This document shows, in pieces, positions 1 through 61,639 of a stretch of 64,000 bases of DNA; the first letter of the stretch is position 1; every line of letters begins with the position of its first letter. The stretch is taken from IMG/VR virus record IMGVR_UViG_3300031951_000003, positions 1 to 64,000 of that record. One strand, written 5' to 3'. The notes beneath the pieces were generated by a model. It was not told the origin of the DNA, searched no databases, and saw nothing but the letters and a program-made list of their open reading frames with translations. A program made the translations under genes and the position numbers.

Positions 1-347
1 GTTCCAGAAGTTCCTGACGAACCACTTGAACCAGATGAGCCAGATGTTCCACTTGTTCCAGATGAGCCAGATGTTCCACTTGTTCCAGATGAACCTGAAC
101 TTCCAGATGAACCTGATGTTCCGCTTGTTCCAGATGTTCCATTAGTTCCAGAAGTTCCTGACGAACCACTTGAACCAGATGAGCCAGATGTTCCACTTGT
201 TCCAGATGAGCCAGATGTTCCACTTGTTCCAGATGAACCTGAACTTCCAGATGAACCTGATGTTCCGCTTGTTCCAGATGTTCCATTAGTTCCAGAAGTT
301 CCTGACGAACCACTTGAACCAGATGAGCCAGATGTTCCACTTGTCCC
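1..347. repeat. 144-bp tandem repeat (about 2.4 copies) inside the collagen-like gene
   Basis: gttccagaagttcctgacgaacc starts at 1, 145 and 289. Confidence 0.85.
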
Positions 348-3300
348 TGATGAACCTGATGTTCCACTTGTTCCTGATGAACCACTTGAACCTGATGAAC
401 CTGATGTTCCAGATGTTCCATTTGTTCCAGATGTTCCGCTTGAGCCTGAACTTCCCGAAGAACCTGATGTTCCGCTTGTTCCAGAAGAGCCCGATGTTCC
501 ACTTGTTCCTGATGAACCACTCGAACCTGAAGAACCTGATGTTCCGCTTGTTCCTGATGTTCCGTCAGTTCCACTTGAACCTGAACTACCTGAAGAACCC
601 GAAGTTCCGCTTGTCCCTGAACTACCTGAAGAACCTGAAGTTCCGCTAGTTCCACTCGAACCTGAACTTCCCGAAGAACCTGAAGTTCCGCTAGTTCCAG
701 ATGTTCCGTTTGTTCCAGATGTTCCGCTTGAACCTGAACTTCCACTTGAACCAGATGTTCCACTTGTTCCCGATGAACCCGATGTTCCAGACGTTCCAGA
801 AGAACCTGAGCTTCCTGAAGAACCTGAAGTTCCGCTAGTTCCAGATGTTCCGTTTGTTCCACTTGTTCCAGAAGAGCCTGAGGAACCACTTGAGCCTGAG
901 GTTCCAGATGAACCTGATGTTCCGCTTGTTCCAGAAGAGCCAGATGAACCACTTGAACCAGATGTTCCACTTGTTCCAGATGTTCCGTTCGTTCCAGATG
1001 TTCCTGATGAACCACTTGAACCGCTTGAACCAGATGTTCCACTAGTACCAGAGGAGCCTGATGTTCCACTTGTGCCCGATGAACCTGAACTACCAGAAGA
1101 ACCTGATGTTCCGCTAGTTCCAGATGTACCATTTGTGCCAGATGTTCCGCTCGAACCTGAGCTACCCGAAGAACCTGATGTCCCTGAAGAACCTGAAGTT
1201 CCACTTGTTCCCGATGAACCAGATGAGCCACTAGAGCCAGATGTTCCGCTTGTTCCCGATGTTCCGTTTGTTCCAGAAGTCCCAGATGAACCACTTGAAC
1301 CTGAAGAACCTGAAGTTCCGCTCGTTCCCGAAGAACCTGAAGAACCTGATGTTCCGCTAGTTCCAGATGAACCACTTGAACCTGAAGAACCTGAAGTTCC
1401 GCTAGTTCCAGAAGTTCCATTTGTTCCAGATGTTCCTGAAGAACCTGAACTTCCACTCGAACCAGATGTTCCTGATGTTCCAGATGAACCAGATGTTCCA
1501 CTTGTGCCTGATGAACCTGAGCTACCCGAAGAACCTGAAGTTCCACTTGTTCCTGATGTCCCAGAAGTTCCATTTGTTCCAGAGGTTCCTGATGAACCTG
1601 AGCTACCACTTGAACCTGATGTCCCTGAAGAGCCAGATGTTCCGCTTGTTCCTGATGAACCACTTGAACCTGACGAACCTGATGTTCCACTTGTTCCCGA
1701 TGTTCCGTTTGTTCCTGAGGTCCCTGATGAACCGCTTGAACCAGATGAGCCTGATGTTCCACTTGTTCCAGAAGAACCTGATGTTCCACTTGTTCCAGAA
1801 GAACCTGAAGAACCGCTTGAACCTGATGTCCCTGAAGAGCCAGATGTTCCACTTGTTCCGGAAGAACCTGAAGAACCACTCGAGCCTGAAGTTCCGGAAG
1901 AACCTGATGTTCCAGAAGAACCTGAAGTTCCAGATGAACCTGAAGTTCCAGATGAACCGTTTCCACCTGTTGCACCATCCAAATTGGTTGTCCAACTATT
2001 GAATGTTCCTGTTCCGTTTATTTCCAACACATATAATGTCAATGCTCCTGTCGAAGAATCATAACTTACAACATCTCCATGGAAGTGATTTGCTAATGAA
2101 TTAGAAACAATAAGATGTTGTGCAATTGTATATGATAAACCAGTGCTTGTTGTTAAAGAAGTATTAGCACTTAACGTTAGTGTTGATAAATCAATTGATG
2201 TTGTTGAAGTTCCACTGTATTGTGCACTAATTCCTGATGTTCCAGATGTTCCGTTCGTTCCAGATGTTCCTGATGAGCCACTCGAACCAGATGAACCCGA
2301 TGTTCCGCTAGTTCCTGATGAACCAGATGTTCCGCTAGTTCCAGATGAACCTGAACTTCCTGATGAACCTGAAGTTCCACTCGTCCCAGATGTTCCATCT
2401 GTTCCAGATGTTCCTGAAGAACCACTCGAACCTGATGAACCTGAAGTTCCACTTGTTCCTGAACTACCTGAAGAACCTGAAGTTCCACTTGTCCCTGAAG
2501 AACCAGATGAACCACTTGAACCTGAAGTCCCACTAGTTCCTGATGTTCCATTTGTTCCAGATGTCCCACTCGAGCCTGAACTTCCGCTTGAACCCGATGT
2601 TCCTGAAGAGCCAGATGTTCCGCTAGTCCCAGATGAACCTGAACTTCCCGAAGAACCTGATGTTCCACTTGTTCCAGATGTCCCATCTGTTCCAGATGTT
2701 CCTGATGAACCTGAGCTACCCGAAGAACCAGATGTTCCTGATGAACCAGATGTTCCACTTGTCCCTGATGAACCAGATGAACCGCTCGAACCTGAAGTTC
2801 CGCTTGTTCCTGATGTTCCATCAGTTCCACTTATTCCTGAAGAACCACTTGTTCCCGAACTTCCTGATGAACCATCAAGGCCATTTAATAAAATCCAACC
2901 ACTAAGTGAAGATGGTTCATTTGTATTATTATTTATAGTTGATTGGTATGAAAATAAACCATCTATAACCATATCGCCATCCATATAAGTTGTTCCCGAT
3001 ACATAAGCTCCTTTGAATGGAGATGTTCCTGATGAACCTGAAGTTCCAGATGAGCCACTTGTTCCTGATGTTCCGTTTACTCCACTTAATCCACTAGAAC
3101 CACTCGAGCCTGATGTCCCATCAGTCCCTGAAGAACCACTTGAACCTGATGTTCCGTCTATTCCACTAGTTCCAGAAGAACCTGATGTTCCACTTGAGCC
3201 TGAAGAACCTGAGCTACCAGATGAACCTGATGTTCCACTTGTGCCTGAAGAACCTGAGCTACCAGATGAACCTGATGTTCCACTTGTTCCTGAACTACCA

Positions 3301-5417
3301 TCTGTTCCACTTGAGCCTGAAGAACCTGAGCTACCAGATGAACCTGATGTTCCACTAGTTCCTGATGAACCACTTGAACCTGAGGTTCCGCTAGTTCCCG
3401 AAGTGCCGTCTGTCCCACTTGAGCCAGATGAACCTGAAGTTCCACTAGTTCCCGAAGTGCCGTCTGTCCCACTTGTTCCAGAAGAACCTGATGTTCCACT
3501 TGTGCCTGAAGAACCACTTGAACCTGATGTTCCGTCTATTCCACTAGTTCCAGAAGAACCTGATGTTCCACTTGAGCCTGAAGAACCTGAGCTACCAGAT
3601 GAACCTGATGTTCCACTAGTTCCTGAAGAACCATCTGTTCCACTGGAACCAGATGAACCTGATGTTCCACTAGTTCCTGAAGAACCATCTGTTCCACTAG
3701 AACCAGATGAACCTGATGTTCCACTTGTGCCTGAAGAACCTGAGCTACCAGATGAACCCGATGTTCCACTAGTTCCTGAAGTTCCGTCCATTCCGCTAGT
3801 TCCTGAAGAACCACTTGAACCTGATGTTCCGCTAGTTCCCGAAGTGCCGTCTGTCCCACTTGAGCCAGATGAACCTGAAGTTCCACTAGTTCCCGAAGTG
3901 CCGTCTGTCCCACTTGTTCCAGAAGAACCTGATGTTCCACTTGTGCCTGAAGAACCACTTGAACCTGATGTCCCACTTGTTCCTGAAGTGCCGTCTATTC
4001 CGCTAGTTCCTGAACTACCGTCTGTTCCACTTGAGCCTGAAGAACCTGAGCTACCAGATGAACCTGATGTTCCACTAGTTCCTGAAGAACCATCTGTTCC
4101 ACTGGAACCAGATGAACCTGATGTTCCACTAGTTCCTGAAGAACCATCTGTTCCACTAGAACCAGATGAACCTGATGTTCCACTTGTGCCTGAAGAACCT
4201 GAGCTACCAGATGAACCCGATGTTCCACTAGTTCCTGAAGTTCCGTCCATTCCGCTAGTTCCTGAAGAACCACTTGAACCTGATGTTCCGCTAGTTCCTG
4301 AAGTTCCATCAATACCACTAGTTCCTGAAGTTCCATCAATACCACTAGTTCCTGAAGAACCTGATGTTCCATCGATACCACTTGTTCCAGAAGTTCCATC
4401 TAATCCGCTTGTTCCTGAAGTTCCATCAATACCACTAGTTCCTGAAGTTCCATCGATACCACTTGTTCCTGATGAACCTGATGTTCCATCGATACCACTT
4501 GTTCCTGATGAACCTGATGTTCCACTTGTTCCCGACGAACCACTTGAGCCTGAAGTTCCACTAATTCCTGAAGTTCCAGATGTTCCGTCTATTCCGCTAG
4601 TCCCAGATGTTCCGTCTATTCCGCTAGTCCCAGATGTTCCGTCTATTCCGCTAGTTCCTGATGTTCCATCTGTTCCACTGGAACCAGATGAACCTGATGT
4701 TCCACTAGTTCCTGAAGAACCATCTGTTCCACTAGAACCAGATGAACCTGAAGAACCTGATGTCCCATCAATTCCACTTGTTCCTGATGTCCCATCAATT
4801 CCACTAGTCCCTGATGTTCCGTCTAAACCGCTTGTTCCAGAAGAACCAGATGTTCCATCTAATCCACTTGTTCCTGATGTCCCATCAATTCCACTAGTTC
4901 CTGAGGTTCCATCAATTCCACTAGTTCCTGAGGTTCCATCTATGCCACTTGAACCAGACGTTCCGTCTACTCCACTTGTTCCTGAAGTGCCATCTATTCC
5001 AGATGTTCCACTCGAACCAGAAGTTCCGGATGTTCCGTCTAATCCGCTTGTTCCTGAAGTTCCATCAATTCCACTAGTTCCTGATGTTCCGTCTATTCCG
5101 CTAGTTCCAGAAGAGCCTGATGTTCCGTCTAAACCACTTGTTCCTGAAGTGCCATCTACCCCAGATGTTCCACTCGAACCAGAAGTTCCGTTGATACCAC
5201 TTGAGCCAGAAGTCCCGTCGATTCCTGATGAACCACTTGAACCAGATGTTCCACTAGTCCCTGATGTTCCTCCTGTTATACTTTCCGTCAAGGCTGAAAA
5301 CGTAATTTGCCCCGAAGTTCCTGATGTGCCTCCAGTATAGTCTGTAACTATATATAACCTATCGTCTGGGGCTGCCGATAGGACTATAGGTAAATCCGTT
5401 ATTCTTGTTGTTGCCAT
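1..5417 (-). CDS. Giant collagen-like (Gly-X-X, Ser/Thr-rich) fibre protein, >1805 aa, 3' end outside the window; absent from the ORF track
   Basis: ATG at 5417. Hand translation gives MATTRITDLPIVLSAAPDDRLYIVTDY... then GTS/GSS/GID/GLD/GTN triplets. The frame is the same at base 3-5 and stays open through the non-repeat inserts at about 2877-3020 and 1970-2230. Pro at every third residue of the + strand shadow ORFs implies Gly at every third codon on the - strand. TATTTAT lies 5 nt upstream of the ATG. Confidence 0.92.
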   Translation of the reverse strand, partial: MATTRITDLPIVLSAAPDDRLYIVTDYTGGTSGTSGQITFSALTESITGGTSGTSGTSGSSGSSGIDGTSGSSGINGTSGSSGTSGVDGTSGTSGLDGTSGSSGTSGIDGTSGTSGIDGTSGTSGLDGTSGTSGSSGTSGIDGTSGTSGVDGTSGSSGIDGTSGTSGIDGTSGTSGIDGTSGTSGLDGTSGSSGTSGLDGTSGTSGIDGTSGTSGIDGTSGSSGSSGSSGTDGSSGTSGTSGSSGSSGTDGTSGTSGIDGTSGTSGIDGTSGTSGIDGTSGTSGISGTSGSSGSSGTSGTSGSSGTSGIDGTSGSSGTSGIDGTSGTSGIDGTSGTSGLDGTSGTSGIDGTSGSSGTSGIDGTSGTSGIDGTSGTSGTSGSSGSSGTSGMDGTSGTSGTSGSSGSSGSSGTSGTSGSSGSSGTDGSSGTSGTSGSSGSSGTDGSSGTSGTSGSSGSSGSSGSSGTDGSSGTSGIDGTSGTSGTSGSSGSSGTSGTSGSSGTSGTDGTSGTSGTSGSSGSSGTDGTSGTSGTSGSSGSSGTSGMDGTSGTSGTSGSSGSSGSSGTSGTSGSSGSSGTDGSSGTSGTSGSSGSSGTDGSSGTSGTSGSSGSSGSSGSSGTSGSSGTSGIDGTSGSSGSSGTSGTSGSSGTSGTDGTSGTSGTSGSSGSSGTDGTSGTSGTSGSSGSSGTSGTSGSSGSSGSSGSSGTDGSSGTSGTSGSSGSSGSSGTSGTSGSSGSSGSSGSSGTSGSSGTSGIDGTSGSSGSSGTDGTSGSSGSSGLSGVNGTSGTSGSSGTSGSSGTSPFKGAYVSGTTYMDGDMVIDGLFSYQSTINNNTNEPSSLSGWILLNGLDGSSGSSGTSGSSGISGTDGTSGTSGTSGSSGSSGSSGTSGTSGSSGTSGSSGSSGSSGTSGTDGTSGTSGTSGSSGSSGSSGTSGTSGSSGTSGSSGSSGSSGTSGTNGTSGTSGTSGSSGSSGSSGTSGTSGSSGSSGTSGTSGSSGSSGSSGTSGTDGTSGTSGTSGSSGSSGSSGTSGTSGSSGTSGTSGSSGSSGSSGTSGTNGTSGTSGISAQYSGTSTTSIDLSTLTLSANTSLTTSTGLSYTIAQHLIVSNSLANHFHGDVVSYDSSTGALTLYVLEINGTGTFNSWTTNLDGATGGNGSSGTSGSSGTSGSSGTSGSSGTSGSSGSSGSSGTSGTSGSSGTSGSSGSSGSSGTSGTSGSSGTSGTSGSSGSSGSSGTSGTNGTSGTSGTSGSSGSSGSSGTSGTSGSSGTSGSSGSSGSSGTSGTNGTSGTSGTSGTSGSSGSSGSSGTSGTSGSSGTSGTSGSSGSSGSSGTSGTNGTSGTSGTSGSSGSSGSSGTSGTSGSSGSSGTSGTSGSSGSSGSSGTSGTNGTSGTSGTSGSSGSSGSSGTSGTSGSSGTSGSSGSSGSSGTSGTNGTSGTSGTSGSSGSSGSSGTSGTSGSSGTSGTSGSSGSSGSSGTSGTNGTSGTSGTSGSSGSSGSSGTSGTSGSSGTSGSSGSSGSSGTSGTNGTSGTSGTSGSSGSSGSSGTSGTSGSSGTSGTSGSSGSSGSSGTSGTNGTSGTSGTSGSSGSSGSSGTSGTSGSSGSSGTSGTSGSSGSSGSSGTDGTSGTSGTSGSSGSSGSSGTSGTSGSSGTSGTSGSSGSSGSSGTSGTNGTSGTSGSSGSSGSSGTSGTSGSSGTSGTSGSSGSSGSSGTSGTNGTSGTSGTSGSSGSSGSSGTSGTSGSSGTSGTSGSSGSSGSSGTSGTNGTSGTSGTSGSSGSSGSSGTSGTSGSSGTSGTSGSSGSSGSSGTSG
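3127..4298. repeat. Nested exact internal duplications in the collagen-like gene
   Basis: 3565-3839 = 4024-4298 (offset 459); 3385-3530 = 3826-3971 (offset 441); about 3127-3238 = 3505-3616 (offset 378). Confidence 0.8.
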
Positions 5418-50711: not shown

Positions 50712-53700
50712 TTAGATATTTTCGAACGAAGCTCCTGTTGGTGTAATAAAGAATTCAATATCTATGAATTCGAGAGCCTTCGTTGGTTTTAAGTAAATCT
50801 TTCCTGTTAATGTGTTTCTGTCTAAATCTTCAGGTGAAGAAGATACTGTCACACGGAAATCATATAGACCTCTATCTCTTCTAATTGAATCAAGGATTGG
50901 GTTCACACTATCCAAGAATTGTTGTCTTACTACTTGGTCGTTCTGTTCGAACAGTAATCTTACAGCCACCGCTGAAATTAACTTACGAGCCTGAAGTAAC
51001 AATCTTCTTACGTTAAGTCTGTTTAGAGCGGTATCCGCAACCTGTAGGGTTTTGTTACCCCAAATTACAGTTCCAACGTCCGCAAAAGTTGCAATAGGGT
51101 TGATTCTTCCTTGATAAAGAGTATCTCTATCCTCTTGAGTCAACTTCAATCTTGCCTTTATTGAATTTACAAGACCTCTTGTGTAACCCGCTGACGCGAA
51201 CCATGGGAAGGATATGTTATCTGTAAGAGCTAAATTTCTACAAACTTCACCTGTTGGTGGTAAGTAAATCTGTGTATTGTTTACTGTATCTCTCACCAAA
51301 ATCCAAGGATAGTAAGTAGATGTATAGTTAGAATCAATTCCTGTGTTATCTAAGTTATCAACCGCTTCCTGAGGATAAATAATATCCAAAGAGTTTGTTC
51401 CATCAGGAGTATACATGTTATAATCTGGTGTCGTTGCTATATAAACAGAATCAGCCCTTTGGAACTGAATCATGTCGATAGCTTCTTCAACAAGGTTTGA
51501 GTTATTGTAATAATCGATACTTGAAGTTGCAAATACATTGATATTAGTAGCTTCAGGATTTCTGAACGTAAGAATACCTAATAGATAAGCATAATAGTCA
51601 GTGTTAGCAAAATCTTGTGTATTGTTTTCAACCACAATTCTCTTAAATAAACCTTGACCAGTTGCTGAAGGATATCTTGATGATGCAGATGCACCCGCCA
51701 AGTAACCTGATGCTCCCAATTGGAATCTATCTTGGTTTGTTCTATATTCTCTATAAATGTCCCAACCATCAAACCCACCAGCGAAACATACTGTGTATTT
51801 TCTTGAGTAGATAAAGTAGTAAGGATTTTCTTGTGTTTCTGGGTCAAATCTGAAATCAGCAACCCCACACTCAAATGCCGGTGTTCCACTTGTTTGATAA
51901 ACATTACCAATAGTAACTACAGTTGCACCTGAGTCCATATGGAAACCTTTACTTAAGTAGTTCCAAGTAGCACCCTCGACAGGGATTGGAGCAATGACCC
52001 AAGAAGGTGGATTTTGTTTACCTTTATAAGAAAGGAATGATTCGTCAATTCCGAACTGAGTTGAAAAACCTAAGTAACTTCTTCTCACTATATCACCAGG
52101 TGACTCGACTAAATTATCACCTCCAGTTGCTGCACCGAAAGGTGGGTTATAGATAACTTCACCAGGGAAGTAGTATTTTGTTTTGAACTTTGGAACAGGA
52201 GATGGATTACTAACAGATGCATATTCTCTTTGAGTGTATCCGTAGAATCCACAAGGAAGTGCATCTATTGGTGCCTCTTCAGACATTTCAACCATCACAT
52301 ATTTTGATATTAAAGCAAACTCACCATTAGAAGAACCAATCTTTTTAGCCACAAAGTTATTTGAAGCTGGGTCCATAGTGCAATTTGTGAATTTCTCAAT
52401 CACAACAGGGTTCGCATCGGTGTCAAAGAAATTTCTAACTAAAACATCAAATGTCATGTTGTTAAAAGACAAGTTCGCGATTGAAACTTTTACTTCAACG
52501 TTAGCTGCATCTCCATCAGAGATTGATATGAATCTGAATAATTTATAAACTTTATTACCTCTCAACTCTGAAACCAAGAATGGTGTCATAGGTGATTGAT
52601 ATTTTTCTACGTTATAAGCAATTGAACTTGGGTCTTCTGTTCTTGCTCCAGGTAAACCAATCAACTGACAATCTAATCCACGGATATAACTTTGATTATA
52701 AGCATAAGCCAAAGAAGCTGGATAAACTTCCTCAACGAATACAGGAACCTCCTGTCTAGATTTTCCGAAATTGTCCGTCCCTAATACTTTAGTTATAAAC
52801 TTAGAAGAAAGTGCCGACAATGAAACTTCAAAACTGAAATTATCATTATCTTTCGTTATACCTGATAACAAGAAGGTTTCGTAAGGATTAATTGTAACCC
52901 CTGAGTATTGTCCCGAACAAACCATAGTTAATGCACTCAATCCTGAAACAGTTCCACCCGAGTTTACCTCGTAAATTGGACCGTGAGCATTACTTGCTGC
53001 ACTATTTTCAAAAAGTGATATACCTCTTGAACGGATTGTCGCTACAACCATGTTATTATATTCACTGAAAGCAGTTCCTGACCATGTATATACATTACCA
53101 GAAATACTACCCGAGAAACTATTAGAAGCTCCTGTTGCTATTGATGAAACAATATAGTCCATAGAATAACCTGAATAGTTATCATTGGAATAGTTGTTAA
53201 AGTTTGCATAGAACCAAGAATCATTCAAACCACTTGTTAAATCATTAAGAGGATAATTTATATTATCACAATTATATACGTTGACTAAGTTACGTCCTGT
53301 AGACAAACTATAATAGTCACTTTCTGGAATTGCACCATATACATTTGCAGTTGTTGAAGACAATGAATTTGTTGTTAGAACATCTTTCACAAACCCTAAA
53401 ATATCGGATTGGATATTAGATGTGCTTCCGTCACTCATTCTATAAAGTGAAGTCAACGAATTGTTAATTTGTGAAGGGAATGAATTAAGAAAAGAAATTG
53501 TATTCCCTGTCGAACTTCCTGTAAAGTTTACCACCCAAGGGGTAGCTGTTGCAGGATTGAAACCAACCGTAGTTGGGTCAACATTAGCAACAACTTTGAT
53601 ACTCCAAGACGGACCTGCGTCGTATCCTGAAAGACCAAGGATTCTTGTTACGAACAATTGATTAGATTGTTGTAAGTAAGATTTGGCAATGTAAGCCGCT

Positions 53701-53936
53701 TCATATTTAGGGATTTGTGTATTAACAAATTTTACAGGCTCGGACCCCCCGAAATATGCCTGAAATTCATCGTAGTTCGTTATAAAAATCGGTTCAAATG
53801 CGGGACCCTTAATTGTTTCCCCAACTAAACCTAACGTAGTAACACCCACACTCTGAGCCACGAATGATAAATCCGTTTCAGAGGTATAAACACCAGGTGA
53901 AACATAAACTTTTTGATTTGCTTGTGCTGTTGCCAT
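50712..53936 (-). CDS. gp18: Contractile tail sheath protein (enlarged)
   Basis: YVSPGVYTSETDLS, VGETIKGPAFEP, YYPW, PWFASAGYTRG, LYQGRINPI, IWGNKTL, NRLNVRRLL, PTKALEFI. Confidence 0.95.
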   Translation of the reverse strand: MATAQANQKVYVSPGVYTSETDLSFVAQSVGVTTLGLVGETIKGPAFEPIFITNYDEFQAYFGGSEPVKFVNTQIPKYEAAYIAKSYLQQSNQLFVTRILGLSGYDAGPSWSIKVVANVDPTTVGFNPATATPWVVNFTGSSTGNTISFLNSFPSQINNSLTSLYRMSDGSTSNIQSDILGFVKDVLTTNSLSSTTANVYGAIPESDYYSLSTGRNLVNVYNCDNINYPLNDLTSGLNDSWFYANFNNYSNDNYSGYSMDYIVSSIATGASNSFSGSISGNVYTWSGTAFSEYNNMVVATIRSRGISLFENSAASNAHGPIYEVNSGGTVSGLSALTMVCSGQYSGVTINPYETFLLSGITKDNDNFSFEVSLSALSSKFITKVLGTDNFGKSRQEVPVFVEEVYPASLAYAYNQSYIRGLDCQLIGLPGARTEDPSSIAYNVEKYQSPMTPFLVSELRGNKVYKLFRFISISDGDAANVEVKVSIANLSFNNMTFDVLVRNFFDTDANPVVIEKFTNCTMDPASNNFVAKKIGSSNGEFALISKYVMVEMSEEAPIDALPCGFYGYTQREYASVSNPSPVPKFKTKYYFPGEVIYNPPFGAATGGDNLVESPGDIVRRSYLGFSTQFGIDESFLSYKGKQNPPSWVIAPIPVEGATWNYLSKGFHMDSGATVVTIGNVYQTSGTPAFECGVADFRFDPETQENPYYFIYSRKYTVCFAGGFDGWDIYREYRTNQDRFQLGASGYLAGASASSRYPSATGQGLFKRIVVENNTQDFANTDYYAYLLGILTFRNPEATNINVFATSSIDYYNNSNLVEEAIDMIQFQRADSVYIATTPDYNMYTPDGTNSLDIIYPQEAVDNLDNTGIDSNYTSTYYPWILVRDTVNNTQIYLPPTGEVCRNLALTDNISFPWFASAGYTRGLVNSIKARLKLTQEDRDTLYQGRINPIATFADVGTVIWGNKTLQVADTALNRLNVRRLLLQARKLISAVAVRLLFEQNDQVVRQQFLDSVNPILDSIRRDRGLYDFRVTVSSSPEDLDRNTLTGKIYLKPTKALEFIDIEFFITPTGASFENI

Positions 53937-53976: not shown

Positions 53977-54055
53977 TTCTAATCTGAATGAAAAAACTTG
54001 ACTTTTGAATATCTATTTGTAAATGGTGAGAATAAATTCTACCTTTTTTCTACCT

Positions 54056-54217
54056 ATGAATAAAAAGAAAGAAATAAAGAATATAAAGATAGCACCTGAG
54101 GTTCACGAGGTATTGAAAAAATACTGTGATAAAAGGGGGATAAAGATTTATAAATTCTTAGAAAATTTAATATTAGAGAAGTGTAAAGAAAAGAAAGATT
54201 TGTATGGGGAGGACTAA
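54056..54217 (+). CDS. Small ribbon-helix-helix DNA-binding protein
   Basis: KNIKIAPEVHEVLKKYCDKRGIKIYKFLENLILE follows the RHH pattern. The ATG at 54056 is preferred over 54023. Confidence 0.65.
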   Translation: MNKKKEIKNIKIAPEVHEVLKKYCDKRGIKIYKFLENLILEKCKEKKDLYGED

Positions 54218-55255: not shown

Positions 55256-55948
55256 TTAATTATTTTTAGTCATTGAACCCACAGTTTTAAGTGCATTCCA
55301 ATGAGAGTCTGACTTGGATGAACTCGCCCCAATCACAATCCCTTGTCCTCTCCCGACTGAGTTTCCAACAAAAACATTTGAAGCAGGAACTCCGTTGTTC
55401 ACAGCATTTCTTACATTATTTTTCGTTTCACTTCCAGCAGCATATGGCTCAATGATGAACAAGTTATTTTTATTTTGACCCAAGACATTTGAAATCTCAT
55501 TAGATTTCCTGCATCCCGCACTGAAAAGATAAATCGGGATTCCTGGGTTTTTATTGATAAAATCTATAATTGTAGAGGATGGTGTGTTAAACCTAAAACC
55601 TTTAACATTCTTTTCAGTTCCAATCCCCTGTTTCAATAAACTTACTTGTGAATCTATATTTAAGTCACCAGACCTATTATCTAACCCCCCAACTAAAATT
55701 GCATCATACTCACCAGATGTTTTTTGTGATGAGGAACCTTTTCTCACAATTTTCAAACCAAACTCTTGTTCCATCGCACCTCTTGTCAAAGGTCCTAACT
55801 TACCATCCACTCCATCTTTGTTTGGACCATACTTACCCAAATCATACCCCTTTTTTATCAGATACTTTTGTATGATTTCAACATTTGGGTCATAGGATAT
55901 TTGTTCTAATAAAAAACCCAATTGTGATTCTTTTAAAATAAATCTCAT
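55256..55948 (-). CDS. Peptidoglycan-binding domain protein with an alpha/beta-hydrolase-like C-terminal domain
   Basis: VEIIQKYLIKKGYDLG...GVDGKLGPLTRGAM (PG_binding_1). IYLFSAG candidate nucleophile elbow. Confidence 0.6.
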   Translation of the reverse strand: MRFILKESQLGFLLEQISYDPNVEIIQKYLIKKGYDLGKYGPNKDGVDGKLGPLTRGAMEQEFGLKIVRKGSSSQKTSGEYDAILVGGLDNRSGDLNIDSQVSLLKQGIGTEKNVKGFRFNTPSSTIIDFINKNPGIPIYLFSAGCRKSNEISNVLGQNKNNLFIIEPYAAGSETKNNVRNAVNNGVPASNVFVGNSVGRGQGIVIGASSSKSDSHWNALKTVGSMTKNN

Positions 55949-55950
55949 AA

Positions 55951-56466
55951 TTAGATTCCGTTAAATTCGTTTTCACTAACCCATGTGGCAACAACAGTTC
56001 TATAGAAAGGTTTGTAACCACCATAGGTGTGTTTATTGTCTGACTTTACATATCCATCATCACTAACAACATAATATCTTACTCTATCTTCACTTTCATA
56101 ATATCCAAAATAATCACCCATGAATATATCAACACCCATGTCATCCAAAGTTTTTTGGTAAATACTAAATCTCATATTACCTGGTTCTTGTAACTCAACT
56201 CTAGAGTTACCAACAGTTTTATTTGTAGGAGCCATAACCTGAACGTAACCCTTCAATTCAACGGGAGCTAAGAACTGAATACCATCTTCCAAAACTTCAC
56301 CATATACATCATCAGTTTTGGTTTTGTATCTATCTATTCTATATAAAATTACGGTGAAATTCATATCACCAATTAACCACTCCTCACCCATACCAATGTC
56401 GAGAGCGTAATCCTCACCGCCAAAAAATTTACCGAGTCTTGTAATTGGAACTAATTTCTCTGCCAT
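55951..56466 (-). CDS. Neck / head-closure protein, T4 gp14-like
   Basis: VILYRID..KTKTDDVYGE...PVELKGY...GDYF. Upstream of the tail completion gene. Confidence 0.65.
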   Translation of the reverse strand: MAEKLVPITRLGKFFGGEDYALDIGMGEEWLIGDMNFTVILYRIDRYKTKTDDVYGEVLEDGIQFLAPVELKGYVQVMAPTNKTVGNSRVELQEPGNMRFSIYQKTLDDMGVDIFMGDYFGYYESEDRVRYYVVSDDGYVKSDNKHTYGGYKPFYRTVVATWVSENEFNGI

Positions 56467-56487: not shown

Positions 56488-56516
56488 TTGATAAATACTT
56501 TTAAGTTTATTATATT
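56488..56516 (+). promoter_or_regulatory. sigma70-like promoter for the SET-SNF2 operon
   Basis: TTGATA, 17-nt spacer, TATATT, ending 8 nt before the ATG at 56525. Confidence 0.55.
56491..56497 (-). promoter_or_regulatory. TATTTAT upstream element
   Basis: 24 nt before the gp14-like ATG. Confidence 0.65.
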
Positions 56517-56524
56517 TAATCCAA

Positions 56525-56920
56525 ATGGAAATTCAAAGAAATACAAAACTACAAGTAAGAAAAAGTTCAATTCACGGTTGGGGGGTTTTCGCATGTGAAG
56601 ACATAAACGAGGGTGAGGTTATTGAAGAGTGTCCGATTCTTAGATTACCTGTTCAAAGAGGAGAAACAAACTACACCTTAATTGACTATACATTTGTATT
56701 TCCAAAAGGAGAGAATTGGCAAAACCACGTTATTGCTCTTGGATATGGTTCACTATATAACCATTCCGAAAACTATAACGCAACATGGGAAGACGATTTG
56801 GACAAAGACATTTTAAGATTTAAAGCAACAAAACCAATTTCGAAAGATGAGGAAGTCACAACTTATTATGGTGATGAAAGTTATTGGTCTGACGGTAGAA
56901 GTCACATTGAAGTAAAATGA
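56525..56920 (+). CDS. SET-domain protein (putative protein lysine methyltransferase)
   Basis: SSIHGWGVFA...I.EGEVIEE, GSLYNHS..YN, ATKPISKDEEVTTYYG. Confidence 0.9.
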   Translation: MEIQRNTKLQVRKSSIHGWGVFACEDINEGEVIEECPILRLPVQRGETNYTLIDYTFVFPKGENWQNHVIALGYGSLYNHSENYNATWEDDLDKDILRFKATKPISKDEEVTTYYGDESYWSDGRSHIEVK

Positions 56921-58677
56921 GCTTATCAGAAATATCACTCGAGTCAAAAGCACTAACACTTCTTGAACAATATGAGGGGTATAACAATTATATCTTGGAA
57001 CTACAAAGGAAATCCCAAGTAAATAAAAAATTCTACCCAACAAGAAGTCAATCAGAATACATAATCAATAACCACGACAAACAACCCAAAGTTGCCAAAA
57101 AGTGGGTAATTTTAGACGCATATTTTGCACAGAAATTAGCTGACGACAAGATGTATACTGAAATCCCACAAAAAGTCTGGGTTGAAAAACTTCTAGCGGA
57201 GAAGGACAAAGCTTATCATATTTGGGGAAAGATTTGGGACTCTGAACAACTACATGATTTTTGGTTACCCAAGGCTTCTATAATAAAAGACAACACCGTT
57301 AAAGACGTTGTCATCGATTTTGAAAAATATTCAAACAGACCCCCGTTAAACCATCAAAAAGAATCCATTCAGAAACTGGTTGAAAATAAAAAATATATTT
57401 TGGCCGATGATATGGGTTTGGGTAAAACAACCTCAACTATAATTGCAGCCTTAGAAACAGGGGCTAAAAAGGTTTTAATCATATGTCCCGCAACTTTGAA
57501 GATAAACTGGAAGCGTGAAATTGAAAATTACTCTGACAGGACAATATACATAGCGGAGGGTAAAAACTTTAGCACAGAACACGACTTTGTAATCATAAAC
57601 TACGACATTCTAAAAAACTTCCATGACCCTAAAAAGAAAGATGATTCGCAAATTCTTAGAGCCAATTTTGATTTGGTTGTTATTGATGAAGCACACTATA
57701 TCAAAAATGCTCAAGCACAAAGAACCAAACTTATAAACGACTTCATAAAAAAAATTGACAGACTTTGGTTATTAACAGGAACACCGATGACATCAAGACC
57801 AATTGATTATTATAATTTATTGAGTCTCGTAGATTCCCCTGTTGCCAAGAACTGGATGGCCTACGTCATAAGATATTGCAGTGGATATCAATTCAAGGTC
57901 GGAGCAAGGAAAGTATGGAACGTAATGGGTGCGTCTAATTTAGATGAACTAAGGGATAGAACCTCGAATACAATCCTAAGGAGATTGAAAGAAGACGTTT
58001 TGGATTTACCTGAAAAAATTATCACACCTGTTTATCTCAGACTCAAATCAAAGGACTATGAAGAACTCATGGGGGAATATTATAATTGGTATGATAAAAA
58101 CCCCGACGAGTCAAAATCGTTAACAGTTCAATTTTCAAAACTTACAAAAGTTAGACAAGTTATTGCCAACGAGAAAATATCTCAAACAATAGAACTTGCC
58201 GAAAACATATTAGAGCAGGACAAAAAAGTTATCATATTTTGTAACTTCACAGATTCACTAAATCAAATTGTTCAACATTTTGGAAAAACTGCCGTCAAAG
58301 TTGATGGGTCAATGACAAAACAAGATAGACAATTTAGTGTTGACCAATTTCAAGAAAATGATAAAATAAAAGTTTTTGTCGGTAACATAAAGGCTGCGGG
58401 TGTTGGACTTACTTTGACTTCCGCAGAAGCGGTTATTATGAACGACTTATCATTCCTACCATCGGACCACTCTCAGGCTGAAGATAGGGCATACAGATTT
58501 GGACAAAAAAATAATGTGTTAGTCTATTATCCAATATTTGAAAACACAATCGAAGGCGCGATATATGACATACTTAATAATAAGAAGCAAGTCATCGCGA
58601 CCGTTATGGGTGACAATCAAAACATCGGTGACACTGCCGAAGAAATTCTGAAAAGAATAAACGAATTACGCCCTTAA
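56917..58677 (+). CDS. SNF2-family helicase/translocase (SMARCAL1/HARP-like)
   Basis: LADDMGLGKT, IDEAH, LTGTP, LRRLKEDV, GVGLTLT, QAEDRAYRFGQ. ATGA overlap with the SET gene. Confidence 0.92.
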   Translation: MSLSEISLESKALTLLEQYEGYNNYILELQRKSQVNKKFYPTRSQSEYIINNHDKQPKVAKKWVILDAYFAQKLADDKMYTEIPQKVWVEKLLAEKDKAYHIWGKIWDSEQLHDFWLPKASIIKDNTVKDVVIDFEKYSNRPPLNHQKESIQKLVENKKYILADDMGLGKTTSTIIAALETGAKKVLIICPATLKINWKREIENYSDRTIYIAEGKNFSTEHDFVIINYDILKNFHDPKKKDDSQILRANFDLVVIDEAHYIKNAQAQRTKLINDFIKKIDRLWLLTGTPMTSRPIDYYNLLSLVDSPVAKNWMAYVIRYCSGYQFKVGARKVWNVMGASNLDELRDRTSNTILRRLKEDVLDLPEKIITPVYLRLKSKDYEELMGEYYNWYDKNPDESKSLTVQFSKLTKVRQVIANEKISQTIELAENILEQDKKVIIFCNFTDSLNQIVQHFGKTAVKVDGSMTKQDRQFSVDQFQENDKIKVFVGNIKAAGVGLTLTSAEAVIMNDLSFLPSDHSQAEDRAYRFGQKNNVLVYYPIFENTIEGAIYDILNNKKQVIATVMGDNQNIGDTAEEILKRINELRP

Positions 58678-58682
58678 CATAG

Positions 58683-58895
58683 ATGGAGAAAGTAACTAAT
58701 CACCAAGGAGTTGAATTGAGAGTTGGTGATAGAATTAAAATTATATCAGACAAATTACATTCAAAATTACTAGCTAACGTTGACCTAAATGAAGAGGTTG
58801 TCATAACAAGTTTTTCAGAAAACGGAAAAATTATATATCATCATAATACATTAGCCCTACCAACCAACAGTGACATTTATGTTAAAATAAATTAA
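58683..58895 (+). CDS. Small hypothetical protein (SH3/KOW-like)
   Basis: 70-aa ORF containing LRVGDRIKI. Starts 5 nt after the SNF2 stop. Confidence 0.55.
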   Translation: MEKVTNHQGVELRVGDRIKIISDKLHSKLLANVDLNEEVVITSFSENGKIIYHHNTLALPTNSDIYVKIN

Positions 58896-58925
58896 AGTCA
58901 ATCAAACCTTAAAACAATTCTGAGT

Positions 58926-58932
58926 TATTTAT
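58926..58932 (+). promoter_or_regulatory. TATTTAT upstream element
   Basis: 22 nt before the SOD ATG, on the + strand like the gene. Confidence 0.65.
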
Positions 58933-58954
58933 ATAAAACGAATAACTCGCCAAT

Positions 58955-60493
58955 ATGAAAAAAATAGAAGAAAGAATTCAACAAATTGAAAAACAAATTA
59001 CCGAAAACCATATCGAAACAGAAAAACAATTGTTGATTACAGAAATGAAAAAAATTGGAATAGAAAAACTACCCTATTCTTATTCAGCCCTCAAAGGATT
59101 CATCGACGCAGAAACGATGAATTTCCACTACAACAAACACTATAAGGGATATGTAGATAAATTAAATGCCGCCCTGTCAAAGAAAAAACATGGAGATTTA
59201 GACTTAGAAAAAATTGTCAAAAACATTAGTCGATACGACCAAGTAGTAAGGAACAACGCTGGAGGAGCATTCAATCACGCACTTTTTTGGAATATGTTGT
59301 CTCCAACACCAAAAAAATTAACAGGGGAATTGTATAAAAAAATTACCAAAGAATACGGTAGTTTCAATCTATTCAAAAAGAAATTTGAAACTGTTGCAAA
59401 GGATAGATTTGGCTCAGGTTGGGTATGGTTAATTTTAACCTCAAAAAATACTTTGAAAATAATGTCGACACCAAATCAAGACAATCCACTTATGAATGTT
59501 ATCGAAGGTGGAGGTTTCCCTCTATTAGGTTTGGACCTTTGGGAACACGCCTACTATTTGAAATACAGAAATAAGAGAGACGAATACATTTCAAATTTTT
59601 GGAAGGTGGTCAATTGGGATTTTGTTCAGAAACTTTATGAAATGAAAGTTGAAACAAAACTACTAGAGTCGAACAAATTTCAAGGAATAATTACTGAATC
59701 AAAAGAACCACAATTCTGTAATCCAAAAGAAGTATTGTTCTATAGAGACTTGATTAATAATTACGCAATCAAAAAAAGATATCAGGAGGGAGTATCCTAC
59801 GTTCTAAAAAAAGTATTTTCACATTTTTGGGTTGAGGGTAATACTGAAGAGATGTCAGGATTTTATGGTGTAGAATCACCCGAGGGTAGGTCTATACTCA
59901 ATAACCTTAATACAAATTTCAATACATTTTGTTTATTGGTAAAAGCAGTAAACAAACAGATTGAATTAATTGGAAGGTCAGAAAAGAAGTTTGATTTTTC
60001 AAAAAAAGAAAAAAGAACTCTAAAGGAAACAACTAGATTTATTTCAGCATTGGACCACTTCAGAAACGAAATCTTTACAGAGAATAACGAAGACTTTATC
60101 AATATAATCAAAGTCCTTAAAAAACTTTGGGATAGGGGTCAAAAGTCTGAAGACAACGCAATTAAAAAAATAGAAGACTATTTTGATGGTAATGCTAAAA
60201 TTGAAAAGATTGGTTCACATGGTGGAAAACAAGACGCCTTCAAAGGTATTGATGTAAATGTGATTTTAGATGGAAAAAAGTTTTCTGCACAGGTTAAACC
60301 ATTCTCTAATGTTTCAATAATCGAGGACAGAGTTAAACTTTTGGATACAGGAAATGTTAAGCATTACGAAGTCGATTGGTATATTTTTATTAATCCTAAA
60401 ACAAATAAGATACTTATATTCAAAAACGACCCTATAAGTGATAAAAACCAATATGTCTTCAACGTTAGTTCACTACTACACGAAATAGAATAA
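58955..60493 (+). CDS. sod: Fe/Mn superoxide dismutase fused to a C-terminal PD-(D/E)xK-like domain
   Basis: SOD motifs LPYSYSAL, HYNKHYKGY, NAGGAFNH, RFGSGW, NQDNP, LDLWEHAYYLKY. C-terminal GQKSED / GIDV / AQVKP. Confidence 0.88.
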   Translation: MKKIEERIQQIEKQITENHIETEKQLLITEMKKIGIEKLPYSYSALKGFIDAETMNFHYNKHYKGYVDKLNAALSKKKHGDLDLEKIVKNISRYDQVVRNNAGGAFNHALFWNMLSPTPKKLTGELYKKITKEYGSFNLFKKKFETVAKDRFGSGWVWLILTSKNTLKIMSTPNQDNPLMNVIEGGGFPLLGLDLWEHAYYLKYRNKRDEYISNFWKVVNWDFVQKLYEMKVETKLLESNKFQGIITESKEPQFCNPKEVLFYRDLINNYAIKKRYQEGVSYVLKKVFSHFWVEGNTEEMSGFYGVESPEGRSILNNLNTNFNTFCLLVKAVNKQIELIGRSEKKFDFSKKEKRTLKETTRFISALDHFRNEIFTENNEDFINIIKVLKKLWDRGQKSEDNAIKKIEDYFDGNAKIEKIGSHGGKQDAFKGIDVNVILDGKKFSAQVKPFSNVSIIEDRVKLLDTGNVKHYEVDWYIFINPKTNKILIFKNDPISDKNQYVFNVSSLLHEIE

Positions 60494-60511: not shown

Positions 60512-61639
60512 ATGGCAGCACTACCAGAACCAGAAAGAAGTAAAATTTATACAAGAGTCAAACACTTGTTGGGAGCACCCTTAAGAAGTGTAGAATTAGA
60601 AGACGAAATGATGGACTCGCTAATGGAATTATCTATTGGTGATTATGAAGAATATATTCTACAATGGCTAATCGATTCACAATGGGTTAACTTAGTAAAC
60701 CTCAATATGAATGAAAAGTCTGTTGCCAGAGCTTTGGTTACAAGGACAATGGACTTCGAACAACAATTTGCATATTCGTATTCTAAGATTGTTGGACTTC
60801 AGACCGTAGGACCATGGGTCTTGAAGAAAGATTATTTCATAATTGAAAAGAATGTTCAGACATACGAAATACCAGCCAACAGAGAAGTCAATGAACTTCT
60901 TTGGTTTAGTAATCAGGCTTGGACAGCATTCGGACTTGGAGGTCTTGGTGGATTTGGATTCGGTGGTATAGGTTTGGGTGCCAATGAAGCAGGATACGCT
61001 CAGATGGGATACCAAGGTTCTTATTTTATGATGTCTGGTTTTGATTACCTCATCAGAATGCAAGAAGCAAATATCTTGAATAGAATTCTCGGTGGTTCTA
61101 TGACATATAGGATTACCGCATTACCTGATGGTAAAAAGTTGATACACTTGATGAATACCCCTGGTGGTAAATTTAACTGGGCTAATTTCAACATGTATGC
61201 TGGTAAAGCGGTTTGGTATTGGTATTATGATGTAACACCAGACAGTAGAGCTGATTGTCTTAAAAACAATCCTGACATTATCAAACTACCGACTGACGTT
61301 CCTCTTGAATCCTTGAGTTGGGAAGATATCAATGTTCCTGGACAACAATGGATAAGAAGATGGTTTACAGCATATTGTAAAGAAACCTTAGCAAGAGTGA
61401 GAGGTAAATACAGTGGGAATCTTAAGACACCTGATTCTGAAATTACAATGGATTACACCAGTCTTTTAACTGAAGCCAAGGATGAAAAATCTAAACTGAT
61501 GGAAGAATTGACGGGCGCTGAAGGATGGCTTACAAGACTAAGACCTGAAAAGGTTATGGAAAGAGAAGCACAAATTGCTGAAAATTTAAATAAACAAATG
61601 AAATTCAGAGCAATGCCTCGTCAAATCTACGTAATCTAA
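60512..61639 (+). CDS. Neck protein, T4 gp13-like (head-tail adaptor)
   Basis: RVKHLLGAPLRSVELEDE, WIRRWFTAYCKETLARVRGKY, AKDEKSKL. Confidence 0.78.
   Translation: MAALPEPERSKIYTRVKHLLGAPLRSVELEDEMMDSLMELSIGDYEEYILQWLIDSQWVNLVNLNMNEKSVARALVTRTMDFEQQFAYSYSKIVGLQTVGPWVLKKDYFIIEKNVQTYEIPANREVNELLWFSNQAWTAFGLGGLGGFGFGGIGLGANEAGYAQMGYQGSYFMMSGFDYLIRMQEANILNRILGGSMTYRITALPDGKKLIHLMNTPGGKFNWANFNMYAGKAVWYWYYDVTPDSRADCLKNNPDIIKLPTDVPLESLSWEDINVPGQQWIRRWFTAYCKETLARVRGKYSGNLKTPDSEITMDYTSLLTEAKDEKSKLMEELTGAEGWLTRLRPEKVMEREAQIAENLNKQMKFRAMPRQIYVI

What the first reader, a model, noticed from the sequence alone, without database searches (positions are those of the whole stretch)
56525..58677. Translationally coupled SET methyltransferase + SNF2 translocase operon in a phage
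Seen: an intact SET domain (NHS and E.T..YG motifs) overlaps a SNF2 ATPase by ATGA, behind a sigma70-like promoter and divergent from the neck genes. Established: SET and SNF2 are the writer and remodeller classes of eukaryotic chromatin. Bacterial SET proteins are mostly known from host-associated species, and phage SET proteins are poorly characterised. Inference: an early host-takeover module that methylates and remodels nucleoid proteins or RNAP, or modifies phage replication proteins.
Basis: partly seen in the sequence, partly recalled or inferred. Interest (0 to 1): 0.62.

Follow-up and report, generated by a model that had tools for sequence, protein, structure and literature searches.

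The report
Swappable SET methyltransferase cassette before phage SNF2
A ~320 kb uncultured freshwater jumbo phage has an intact, virus-type SET protein methyltransferase gene placed between a conserved promoter and a core SNF2 DNA motor gene; the SET gene is an optional, often exchanged add-on rather than the motor's obligate partner, and its target is unknown.

Summary
SET (56525-56920, 131 aa; Pfam E 5e-13) overlaps SNF2 (56917-58677, 586 aa) by ATGA. A TTGATA-17-TATATT element lies upstream at 56488-56516. The fuller form of that element is present in 80 of 80 related loci.

SET looks active. All catalytic motifs are present and invariant in 86 alleles. Its closest structure is chlorovirus vSET, and it is under purifying selection.

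The "writer plus remodeller module" reading is only partly supported.
- SNF2 is a core gene, at least 84% identical across the 80 best related loci kept.
- The slot in front of it is polymorphic. Among 59 distinct loci it is empty in 23, holds one of two deeply divergent SET subtypes in 34, and holds tandem SETs in 2.
- One complete 317 kb relative has no SET at all.
- A sister lineage keeps SET 12.5 kb away in a glycosyltransferase island.
- Two other near-complete phages have SET but no SNF2 orthologue.
- Near-identical backbones (SNF2 98.5%) carry SETs only 29.5% identical.

Where SET is present, the junction with SNF2 is always tight (-26 to +12 nt, mostly -4 or -1).

My reading is that SET is an accessory lysine methyltransferase that uses SNF2's promoter and acts on some other protein. 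SNF2 is probably a replication or recombination translocase. No substrate or expression timing was tested.

The parts
56488..56516 (+). Conserved promoter-like element TTGATAAATAC-N12-TATATT in the 58-nt divergent intergenic region. It reads either as sigma-70 type (-35/17/-10) or as a Bacteroidota-type TTG...TAnnTTT promoter.
   Evidence: 10 of 12 match. The motif is present upstream of the first + strand gene in 80 of 80 related loci, whether or not SET is present. The TGATAAATA core is found at 3 of the 4 divergent junctions of the 105.6 kb contig.
56525..56920 (+). SET-domain protein lysine methyltransferase, 131 aa. It is a minimal vSET-like type with a 'YW-DGR' C-terminal tail.
   Evidence: Pfam SET E 5e-13. 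Best PDB sequence hit is PBCV-1 vSET, E 2e-14. AF2 model pLDDT 85.7; Foldseek top hits are vSET (TMt 0.86), PFL0690c and S. pombe Set7. G20, N79, H80, E110 and Y115 are invariant in 86 alleles. dN/dS is 0.04-0.08 among close alleles.
56917..56920 (+). ATGA stop/start overlap between SET and SNF2.
   Evidence: Sequence. In 53 distinct SET+SNF2 loci the junction is -4 (16 loci), -1 (17), 0 (7), +2 to +12 (12) and -26 (1).
56917..58677 (+). SNF2-family ATPase/dsDNA translocase, 586 aa. Residues 1-140 form a conserved N-terminal domain of unknown fold; the SNF2 core spans residues 144-570.
   Evidence: Pfam SNF2-rel_dom plus Helicase_C. phrog_62 8e-114. Best PDB hit is Sulfolobus SSO1653 Rad54-like, 1z63, E 1e-34. 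At least 84% identical in the best 80 of 361 IMG/VR relatives. dN/dS about 0.02.
58683..58895 (+). Conserved small ORF (70 aa) of unknown function, 5 nt after SNF2.
   Evidence: ORF list. ORFs of 71-77 aa occupy the same position in relatives. No family hit.
58955..60493 (+). Fe/Mn superoxide dismutase (aa 36-226) fused to an unknown C-terminal part of about 280 aa. It lies in the same strand block.
   Evidence: Pfam Sod_Fe_C 1.4e-39 and Sod_Fe_N 1e-22. NCBIfam Mn-SOD 196 bits, below the cut-off. A stand-alone 231-aa SOD occurs in relatives.
60512..61639 (+). gp13-like neck/head-tail adaptor protein (375 aa), on the same strand, with no predicted terminator between it and SNF2.
   Evidence: phrog_211 head-tail adaptor Ad2, 1.1e-9. 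Precomputed PF26809 Phage_T4_gp13 on orthologues. Terminator scans.
55951..56466 (-). Divergently transcribed 171-aa gene heading the tail/sheath gene string (171, 230, 346 aa, then the 1074-aa sheath). It is possibly a neck or head-tail joining protein.
   Evidence: Conserved at 72-97% identity in clade members. Atlas look-alikes include T4_neck-protein and Phage_H_T_join_2 clusters, which is a lead only. Sheath identified by Pfam and PHROG.

Best explanation
The window belongs to a widespread clade of ~320 kb freshwater jumbo myoviruses. The host is probably in the Bacteroidota (inferred).

In this clade a conserved host-type promoter sits at the junction with the neck/tail genes. It drives a rightward unit whose first core gene is an SNF2-family dsDNA translocase. 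I take this to be a replication, recombination or transcription-associated motor of the UvsW/RapA-analogue kind (inferred).

The SET gene is an accessory cassette inserted exactly between that promoter and the SNF2 start codon. It therefore borrows the promoter, and its stop overlaps or abuts the SNF2 start, so it is co-transcribed and translationally coupled. The architecture is shown; expression is inferred.

SET is a minimal, vSET-like, SAM-dependent protein lysine methyltransferase. It is catalytically intact and under purifying selection. The slot is repeatedly emptied, refilled and swapped between two SET subtypes, and the same gene sits elsewhere, or occurs without SNF2, in other phages. 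Its function therefore does not depend on SNF2.

Most likely SET methylates lysines of another protein during infection. By analogy with vSET (histone H3K27) and Methanosarcina Go1-SET (chromatin protein MC1-alpha), my first guess is an abundant basic DNA-associated host protein. The target is pure inference.
For: Domains, motifs and fold.

SNF2 is a core gene and strongly constrained.

The promoter motif is conserved in 80 of 80 loci, with SET (when present) always between motif and SNF2.

Slot polymorphism, 59 distinct loci: none 23, DGR type 22, INY type 12, tandem 2. On the SNF2 tree this needs at least 5 presence/absence changes and at least 11 type changes.

Allele swap: SNF2 98.5% against SET 29.5% identity for L049 versus L050.

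A complete SET-less genome, G001.

The sister lineage G007 has the same synteny without SET at SNF2, and SET lies 12.5 kb away in a glycosyltransferase island.

SET without an SNF2 orthologue in G008 (97% complete) and G010 (100% complete).

Purifying selection on SET, dN/dS 0.04-0.08.

Host inference:
- The closest cellular SETs are in Flavobacterium.
- The complete genome encodes a protein with a T9SS sorting domain.
- There is no Shine-Dalgarno enrichment.

SNF2 as a UvsW or RapA substitute in jumbo myoviruses is proposed in PMC7824862. vSET and Go1-SET precedents are cited in PMC10117894.
Against: The slot never holds anything but SET. Two deeply divergent SET subtypes both landed there, and every junction is tight. 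This could reflect selection for co-expression with SNF2 rather than mere recombination through the conserved flanks.

No substrate evidence exists.

The phages encode no HU-family protein of their own, so a DNA-protein target would have to be the host's.

In other lineages SET sits among glycosyltransferase, neck and terminase genes, which points to a late or virion-related role rather than a nucleoid one.
Confidence: 0.6

Rival explanations
1. One reading: SET and SNF2 form one functional module. SET would either methylate SNF2 or methylate the same nucleoprotein substrate that SNF2 remodels, as an early host-takeover device.
For: Adjacency in 36 of 59 distinct close relatives and in more distant clade members. 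Stop/start overlap or a gap of at most 12 nt in all 53 distinct junctions. Two divergent SET subtypes occupy the same slot and no non-SET gene ever does. A conserved host-type promoter lies upstream.
Against: 23 of 59 relatives, and a complete 317 kb genome, lack SET although SNF2 is at least 84% identical. SET and SNF2 are unlinked in the sister lineage G007. SET occurs without an SNF2 orthologue in two (near-)complete phages. The SNF2 sequence, including the N-terminal domain, is equally conserved in SET+ and SET- phages. Tight overlaps are the genome-wide style.
Confidence: 0.13
2. SET is a late-acting modifier of phage structural or surface proteins. It would methylate lysines of virion proteins as part of the protein-decoration (glycosylation/methylation) islands of these jumbo phages, or it is packaged like chlorovirus vSET.
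For: In other lineages SET is embedded among glycosyltransferases, sugar epimerases/aminotransferases and Methyltransf_24, next to neck and terminase genes. In the window clade the slot lies between neck/tail genes and a gp13-like neck gene, with no predicted terminator. Relatives carry Methyltransf_21/24 and GLF genes in the same strand block.
Against: The conserved promoter is of host primary-sigma type rather than shared with the long structural gene strings. No virion proteomics exists. The closest characterised SETs act on DNA-bound proteins.
Confidence: 0.15
3. SET is a counter-defence or host-manipulation enzyme in an arms race. It would methylate and disable a host defence or regulatory protein, which would explain its accessory status and subtype swapping.
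For: Presence/absence polymorphism, two subtypes, tandem copies and swaps between near-identical backbones are typical of phage accessory genes that interact with the host. The position directly behind a host-type promoter fits this.
Against: Within subtypes SET evolves under strong purifying selection (dN/dS 0.04-0.08), with no sign of diversifying selection. There is no hit in PADLOC, no known lysine-methylation counter-defence, and no host is known.
Confidence: 0.1

Closest known systems
PBCV-1 (chlorovirus) vSET / A612L, PDB 1n3j and 3kma
   Same: A minimal SET domain of about 120-130 aa without pre- or post-SET modules, and virus-encoded. It is the best PDB match by sequence (E 2e-14) and by fold (TMt 0.86). 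It shares the GxG, NHS and E..YGD.YW motifs.
   Different: About 32% identity. The host is bacterial and has no histones, so the H3K27 target cannot apply. The phage family has its own conserved 'W-DGR-H' C-terminal tail. Dimerisation and virion packaging are untested.
Small prokaryotic SET proteins (e.g. Methanosarcina mazei Go1-SET; uncharacterised Flavobacterium/Saprospiraceae SETs)
   Same: Same size class and motifs, 37-46% identity to the window protein. Go1-SET methylates the archaeal chromatin protein MC1-alpha (cited in PMC10117894).
   Different: These are cellular, stand-alone genes with unrelated neighbours. No function is known for the Bacteroidota homologues.
Phage SNF2-family DNA helicases (phrog_62) and Sulfolobus SSO1653 (PDB 1z63)
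   Same: Full SNF2 ATPase core with all helicase motifs. E 8e-114 to phrog_62 and 1e-34 to 1z63. About 30% identity to helicases of Thermus, Bacteroides and Cellulophaga phages.
   Different: It carries a clade-specific, highly conserved 140-aa N-terminal domain with no significant fold match. It sits beside neck/tail genes rather than inside a classical replication module.
RapA (bacterial RNAP-recycling SNF2) and T4 UvsW (functional analogues)
   Same: Jumbo-phage Snf2 proteins have been proposed to substitute for UvsW in recombination-dependent replication or to act like RapA (PMC7824862). There is a weak small beta-barrel N-terminal to the ATPase, as in RapA (Z at most 4.9).
   Different: The RapA model scores 63 bits against a cut-off of 576, so it is not a RapA orthologue. 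UvsW belongs to a different SF2 family.
Phage morons / accessory cassettes
   Same: Presence/absence polymorphism among close relatives, insertion at a gene boundary, and exchange between genomes.
   Different: It has no promoter or terminator of its own. It is inserted downstream of the resident promoter and coupled to the next core gene.

Membership tests
SET-domain protein lysine methyltransferases (Pfam PF00856) | Profile match above the curated threshold over the whole domain | tested here: met
   49.8 bits against a cut-off of 22.4, profile positions 1-105 of 105; also found in the whole-contig scan.
SET-domain protein lysine methyltransferases (Pfam PF00856) | SAM-binding GxG, NH(S/C) motif and catalytic Tyr in the E..Y motif | tested here: met
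   G18-W-G20, N79-H80-S81 and E110...Y115 are present. G20, N79, H80, E110 and Y115 are invariant in 86 distinct alleles.
SET-domain protein lysine methyltransferases (Pfam PF00856) | SET beta-fold | tested here: met
   AF2 model pLDDT 85.7. There are 352 PDB matches at E <= 0.001, and those listed are SET domains; the top hit is vSET, TMt 0.86.
SET-domain protein lysine methyltransferases (Pfam PF00856) | SAM-dependent methyl transfer to protein lysine | not testable with these tools
   Needs a biochemical assay.
vSET-like minimal SET (no pre/post-SET, homodimer, histone H3K27) | Single domain of about 120-130 aa without Cys-rich flanking modules; closest solved relative is vSET | tested here: met
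   131 aa. The best PDB hits are vSET, S. pombe Set7 and PFL0690c.
vSET-like minimal SET (no pre/post-SET, homodimer, histone H3K27) | Homodimer and H3K27 specificity | not tested
A bacterial host offers no histone substrate.
SNF2 family ATPases | SNF2-related N-lobe plus Helicase_C lobe with motifs I, II, III and VI | tested here: met
   PF00176 4.4e-30 and PF00271 7.9e-19. GLGKT, DEAH, TGTP and QAEDRAYRFGQ are read in the translation and are invariant in 25 orthologues.
RapA (RNAP-associated SNF2) | Equivalog-level match to the RapA model | tested here: not met
   NF003426 scores 63.2 bits against a cut-off of 576.
Defence-system SNF2 helicases (ZorD, DrmD, DpdE, BrxH) | Full-length match including the system-specific domains, and a defence gene neighbourhood | tested here: not met
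   Only the generic SNF2 core aligns. The neighbours are phage structural and replication genes.
Translationally coupled operon | Same strand, overlapping or abutting stop/start, no intervening terminator, shared upstream promoter | tested here: met
   ATGA overlap. No + strand terminator is predicted. The promoter motif is conserved. All 53 distinct junctions lie between -26 and +12 nt.
Translationally coupled operon | Demonstrated co-transcription | not testable with these tools
Obligate two-gene functional module (SET+SNF2) | Co-occurrence: each gene rarely occurs without the other in related genomes | tested here: not met
   SNF2 without SET in 23 of 59 distinct loci and in a complete genome. 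SET without adjacent SNF2 in 27 of 80 SET loci, and without any SNF2 orthologue in G008 and G010.

The most novel reading that the evidence does not exclude
Jumbo phages of Bacteroidota carry a family of exchangeable, vSET-like lysine methyltransferase cassettes in two subtypes, sometimes in tandem. These would be expressed from an early host-type promoter and would methylate a host protein (a nucleoid-associated, transcription or defence protein) to take over or disarm the cell. That would be a bacterial-virus counterpart of chlorovirus vSET and the first protein-methylation takeover mechanism described in a phage. The recurrent placement in front of SNF2 would then reflect selection for co-delivery with a DNA motor.
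Probability: 0.2. Interest if true: 0.75.

Novelty: new member of a known kind. Interest (0 to 1): 0.42.

Why it matters
SET-domain lysine methyltransferases are well understood in eukaryotic chromatin and in a few secreted bacterial effectors. Their role in free-living bacteria and in phages is essentially unknown; phage papers only list them as annotations.

This locus shows that a vSET-like enzyme family is common in uncultured jumbo phages, with at least 389 IMG/VR loci. The family is intact and under purifying selection, and it behaves as a mobile accessory cassette with two subtypes.

That gives a natural experiment for finding the substrate, because near-isogenic SET+, SET- and subtype-swapped phage genomes exist. 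It also corrects the tempting 'chromatin writer plus remodeller' reading: the SNF2 gene is a core phage DNA motor that does not need SET.

Tried and rejected
- Complex prediction on SET + full-length SNF2 returned 'no answer' (score 0.00). It counts neither for nor against binding.
- blastn of the locus against cultured phage records found no match. tblastn with SET found only a 735 kb metagenomic megaphage (47% identity, SET alone among opposite-strand small ORFs) and Stenotrophomonas phage Mendera (35%, among small hypothetical genes).
- SNF2 N-terminal domain (aa 1-150): AF2 pLDDT 76. Foldseek gave no match at E <= 0.001. VIA-align gave only Z <= 4.9 to Sm/SH3-like small beta-barrels over residues 58-126. 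This is too weak to name a fold.
- The generic sigma-70 scan was not above the shuffled expectation, so the promoter claim rests on conservation, not on the scan.
- My first motif search used the wrong spacer length and missed the site; this was corrected.
- With the strict definition, the motif occurs only twice in the complete 321 kb genome, so it is not a general promoter class.
- HU-family (PF00216) search in five phage genomes found none, so there is no phage-encoded HU substrate candidate.
- PADLOC had no hit for SET. NCBIfam and PADLOC hits for SNF2 cover the generic core only.
- Neighbourhoods of cellular SET homologues (Flavobacterium, Chitinophaga, Saccharibacteria) and of other phage SETs showed no recurrent partner.
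- I first read the low SET identity as pure allele swapping. dS is saturated (>1) for both genes, so much of the SET divergence may be in situ under weaker constraint. Swapping is demonstrated only for pairs such as L049/L050 and L089/L091.
Full report
**1. What is there**

The window coincides with the first 64 kb of a complete 321,283-bp phage genome with direct terminal repeats (G006; one search places the promoter site at the same coordinates). It is itself cut from a 105.6 kb IMG/VR contig.

The region is the tail and neck end of a jumbo myovirus. A 1074-aa sheath gene on the minus strand (50712-53936) is preceded by minus-strand genes of 346, 230 and 171 aa. A 58-nt divergent intergenic region follows. 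Then comes a plus-strand block:
- SET, 56525-56920
- SNF2, 56917-58677
- a 70-aa ORF
- a 512-aa Fe/Mn superoxide dismutase fusion
- a gp13-like neck protein
- a 111-aa ORF

This block converges on a family-B DNA polymerase gene on the minus strand.

**2.

SET matches Pfam PF00856 over the whole profile (E 5e-13). SNF2 has both lobes (4e-30 and 8e-19) and matches the common phage helicase family phrog_62 at 8e-114. The ATG of SNF2 overlaps the TGA of SET (ATGA, 56917-56920).

A consensus scan alone is worthless in this 36% GC genome: 14 sites were found against 10.2 +/- 3.4 in shuffles. However, the element T[TG]GATAAATA[CT]-N10-14-TA[TC]ATT is present upstream of this unit in all 80 related loci examined, while the surrounding spacer varies.

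Its core, TGATAAATA, occurs five times in the 105.6 kb contig. Three of those fall in three of the four divergent intergenic regions. It fits a sigma-70 promoter. With TTG-N20-TAnnTTT it also fits a Bacteroidota primary-sigma promoter; that consensus is from my own knowledge. Overlaps of -4 and -1 are the general style of this genome, so the ATGA overlap is not in itself remarkable.

**3. SET is a vSET-like minimal lysine methyltransferase and looks active**

The best solved relatives are PBCV-1 vSET (E 2e-14), S. pombe Set7 and Plasmodium PFL0690c. An AF2 model (pLDDT 85.7) superposes on vSET with TM 0.86, normalised by the target.

In 86 distinct alleles from phage contigs, G20, N79, H80, E110 and Y115 are invariant. 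Among close alleles dN/dS is 0.04-0.08.

The family is large:
- 181 clusters in the protein collection
- at least 389 loci in IMG/VR
- at least 584 loci in representative prokaryote genomes

The closest cellular copies are in Flavobacterium (43-46%), followed by other Bacteroidota, Methanosarcina, Saccharibacteria and others. In cultured phages SET has only been noted as an annotation (Mendera gp270; Ps15 ORF62).

**4. SNF2 is a core gene**

The search for related loci returned 361 IMG/VR relatives, and the best 80 are 84-100% identical. dN/dS is about 0.02 although dS is saturated. The 140-aa N-terminal domain is as conserved as the ATPase.

Its closest solved relative is the Sulfolobus Rad54-like SSO1653. 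It reaches no equivalog threshold: RapA scores 63 against 576 bits. Hits to the defence helicases ZorD, DrmD and DpdE cover only the generic core.

A comparative study of jumbo phages proposed that such Snf2 proteins replace UvsW in recombination-dependent replication or act like RapA (PMC7824862). I adopt that as the likely role. The gene lies about 3.3 kb from the DNA polymerase gene.

**5. Test of the proposed linkage**

Within the clade the synteny sheath-346-(variable)-171 | SET-SNF2-small ORF-SOD-gp13 holds even where SET is only 40-58% identical. Every one of 53 distinct SET/SNF2 junctions lies between -26 and +12 nt, mostly -4 or -1.

The slot is nevertheless polymorphic. The 80 loci retrieved through SNF2 reduce to 59 distinct loci:

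| Slot content | Distinct loci |
|---|---|
| No SET; SNF2 follows the promoter after about 20-25 nt | 23 |
| 'DGR-tail' subtype (the window's type) | 22 |
| Short, deeply divergent 'INY' subtype | 12 |
| Both subtypes in tandem (L049) | 1 |
| Two DGR copies (L067) | 1 |

Further points:
- A complete 317 kb relative (G001, CheckV 100%) has no SET anywhere.
- On the SNF2 tree the slot state needs at least 11 changes, of which at least 5 are presence/absence changes.
- On the SET tree the SNF2-linked alleles are not one clade: 7 label changes, of which at least 2 are forced.
- Backbones with 98.5% identical SNF2 carry SETs of 29.5% identity.

Outside the slot:
- 27 of 80 IMG/VR SET loci have no SNF2 within 4 kb.
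- In the sister lineage G007 (SNF2 70%, sheath 58%, PolB 68%) the whole synteny is kept, but SNF2 follows the junction directly. SET lies 12.5 kb away, beyond PolB, in a glycosyltransferase island. The window phage also has this island, without SET.
- G008 (97% complete) and G010 (100% complete) have SET, in tandem in G010's locus L183, but no SNF2 orthologue.
- The 735 kb megaphage has SET alone.

**6. Interpretation**

The data fit promoter capture by an accessory cassette. SET sits between a conserved promoter and the first core gene. It is kept tightly coupled, and it is exchanged among related phages, probably by recombination through the conserved flanks (the promoter and the 5' end of SNF2).

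Only SET genes are ever found in the slot, and two subtypes have occupied it. This is the best remaining argument for a functional tie to SNF2, and I give that model 0.13.

The contexts in other lineages are sugar- and methyl-transferase islands next to neck and terminase genes. In the window, the same-strand block contains a neck gene with no predicted terminator in between. These keep a late, virion-modifying role alive (0.15). An arms-race or counter-defence role is possible (0.10), but purifying selection and the lack of any precedent do not favour it.

My preferred reading (0.6) is an independent, active lysine methyltransferase acting on a non-SNF2 protein. The phages encode no HU of their own. 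The target and the timing are inference only.

**7. Host**

The host is inferred to be in the Bacteroidota, on three grounds:
- The closest cellular SETs are in Flavobacterium.
- The complete genome encodes a protein with a type IX secretion sorting domain, and related SET-bearing contigs do too.
- There is no Shine-Dalgarno enrichment: 6% of genes against 9% background.

**8. Limits**

The complex prediction gave no verdict. The fold of the SNF2 N-terminal domain remains unassigned. dS saturation prevents dating of the swaps. Counts come from capped searches (80 loci per call), so the proportions are estimates.

Noticed in passing
window 58955-60493 (+): A 512-aa protein has a complete Fe/Mn superoxide dismutase (aa 36-226) fused to an unknown C-terminal part of about 280 aa. 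Relatives have a stand-alone 231-aa SOD followed by Methyltransf_21/24 or GLF genes (L031, L032). The sister lineage G007 has a 737-aa protein that matches only the C-terminal part. SOD is unusual in phages.
   Followed up: partly
window 1-5417 (ORF 3..5417, - strand, 1805 aa, runs off the window): A huge array of degenerate 9-nt-period repeats (higher-order periods 27-459 nt) leaves several frames open on both strands. On the minus strand it would encode a Gly/Ser/Thr-rich, triplet-periodic (collagen-like) fibre protein.
   Followed up: partly
window 53968, 56489; contig position = window 76725: The core TGATAAATA of the promoter-like element occurs at three of the four divergent (-/+) intergenic regions of the 105.6 kb contig. 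This suggests a shared promoter or regulator site for the rightward units.
   Followed up: partly
window 54023-54217 (+): A small plus-strand ORF (64 aa here, called as 53 aa in relatives, with a weak RepB-RCR_reg hit) is wedged between the minus-strand sheath and 346-aa genes. It is conserved in relatives and is preceded by an AATGATAAATA motif. It may be a small regulator.
   Followed up: no
window 55256-55948 (-): The slot between the 346-aa and 171-aa genes is variable. The window has a 230-aa protein with a weak PG_binding_1 match. Relatives have one or two unrelated genes of 120-215 aa, or none.
   Followed up: partly
L049:3208-3989, L067:3202-3989, L183:3594-4390: Tandem SET genes: INY+DGR subtypes in L049, two DGR-type copies in L067, and two SETs in a complete 245 kb phage (L183). 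This suggests heterodimers or distinct substrates.
   Followed up: partly
G006:C1:168901-169137 (complete genome of the window's phage): A 640-aa open frame ends in a Por_Secre_tail (type IX secretion sorting) domain. This is a Bacteroidota hallmark and was used as a host hint.
   Followed up: no
G000 contig, window-equivalent 64782-71822 (- strand, just outside the window): A glycosyltransferase island (GlcNAc PF11397, HtrL_YibB) lies beyond the DNA polymerase gene. The homologous island of the sister lineage G007 is where that phage keeps its SET gene.
   Followed up: partly
window 58896-58954: The 59-nt gap before the SOD gene contains an AT-rich inverted repeat (GAGTTATT...AATAACTC) that the terminator scan did not call. 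It may be a regulatory hairpin or an internal transcription boundary.
   Followed up: no
P0002 residues 58-126 (window 57088-57294): The conserved N-terminal domain of SNF2 models as three helices plus a small beta-barrel, with only weak (Z <= 4.9) resemblance to Sm/SH3/WYL-like barrels. Its fold and role are unassigned.
   Followed up: yes
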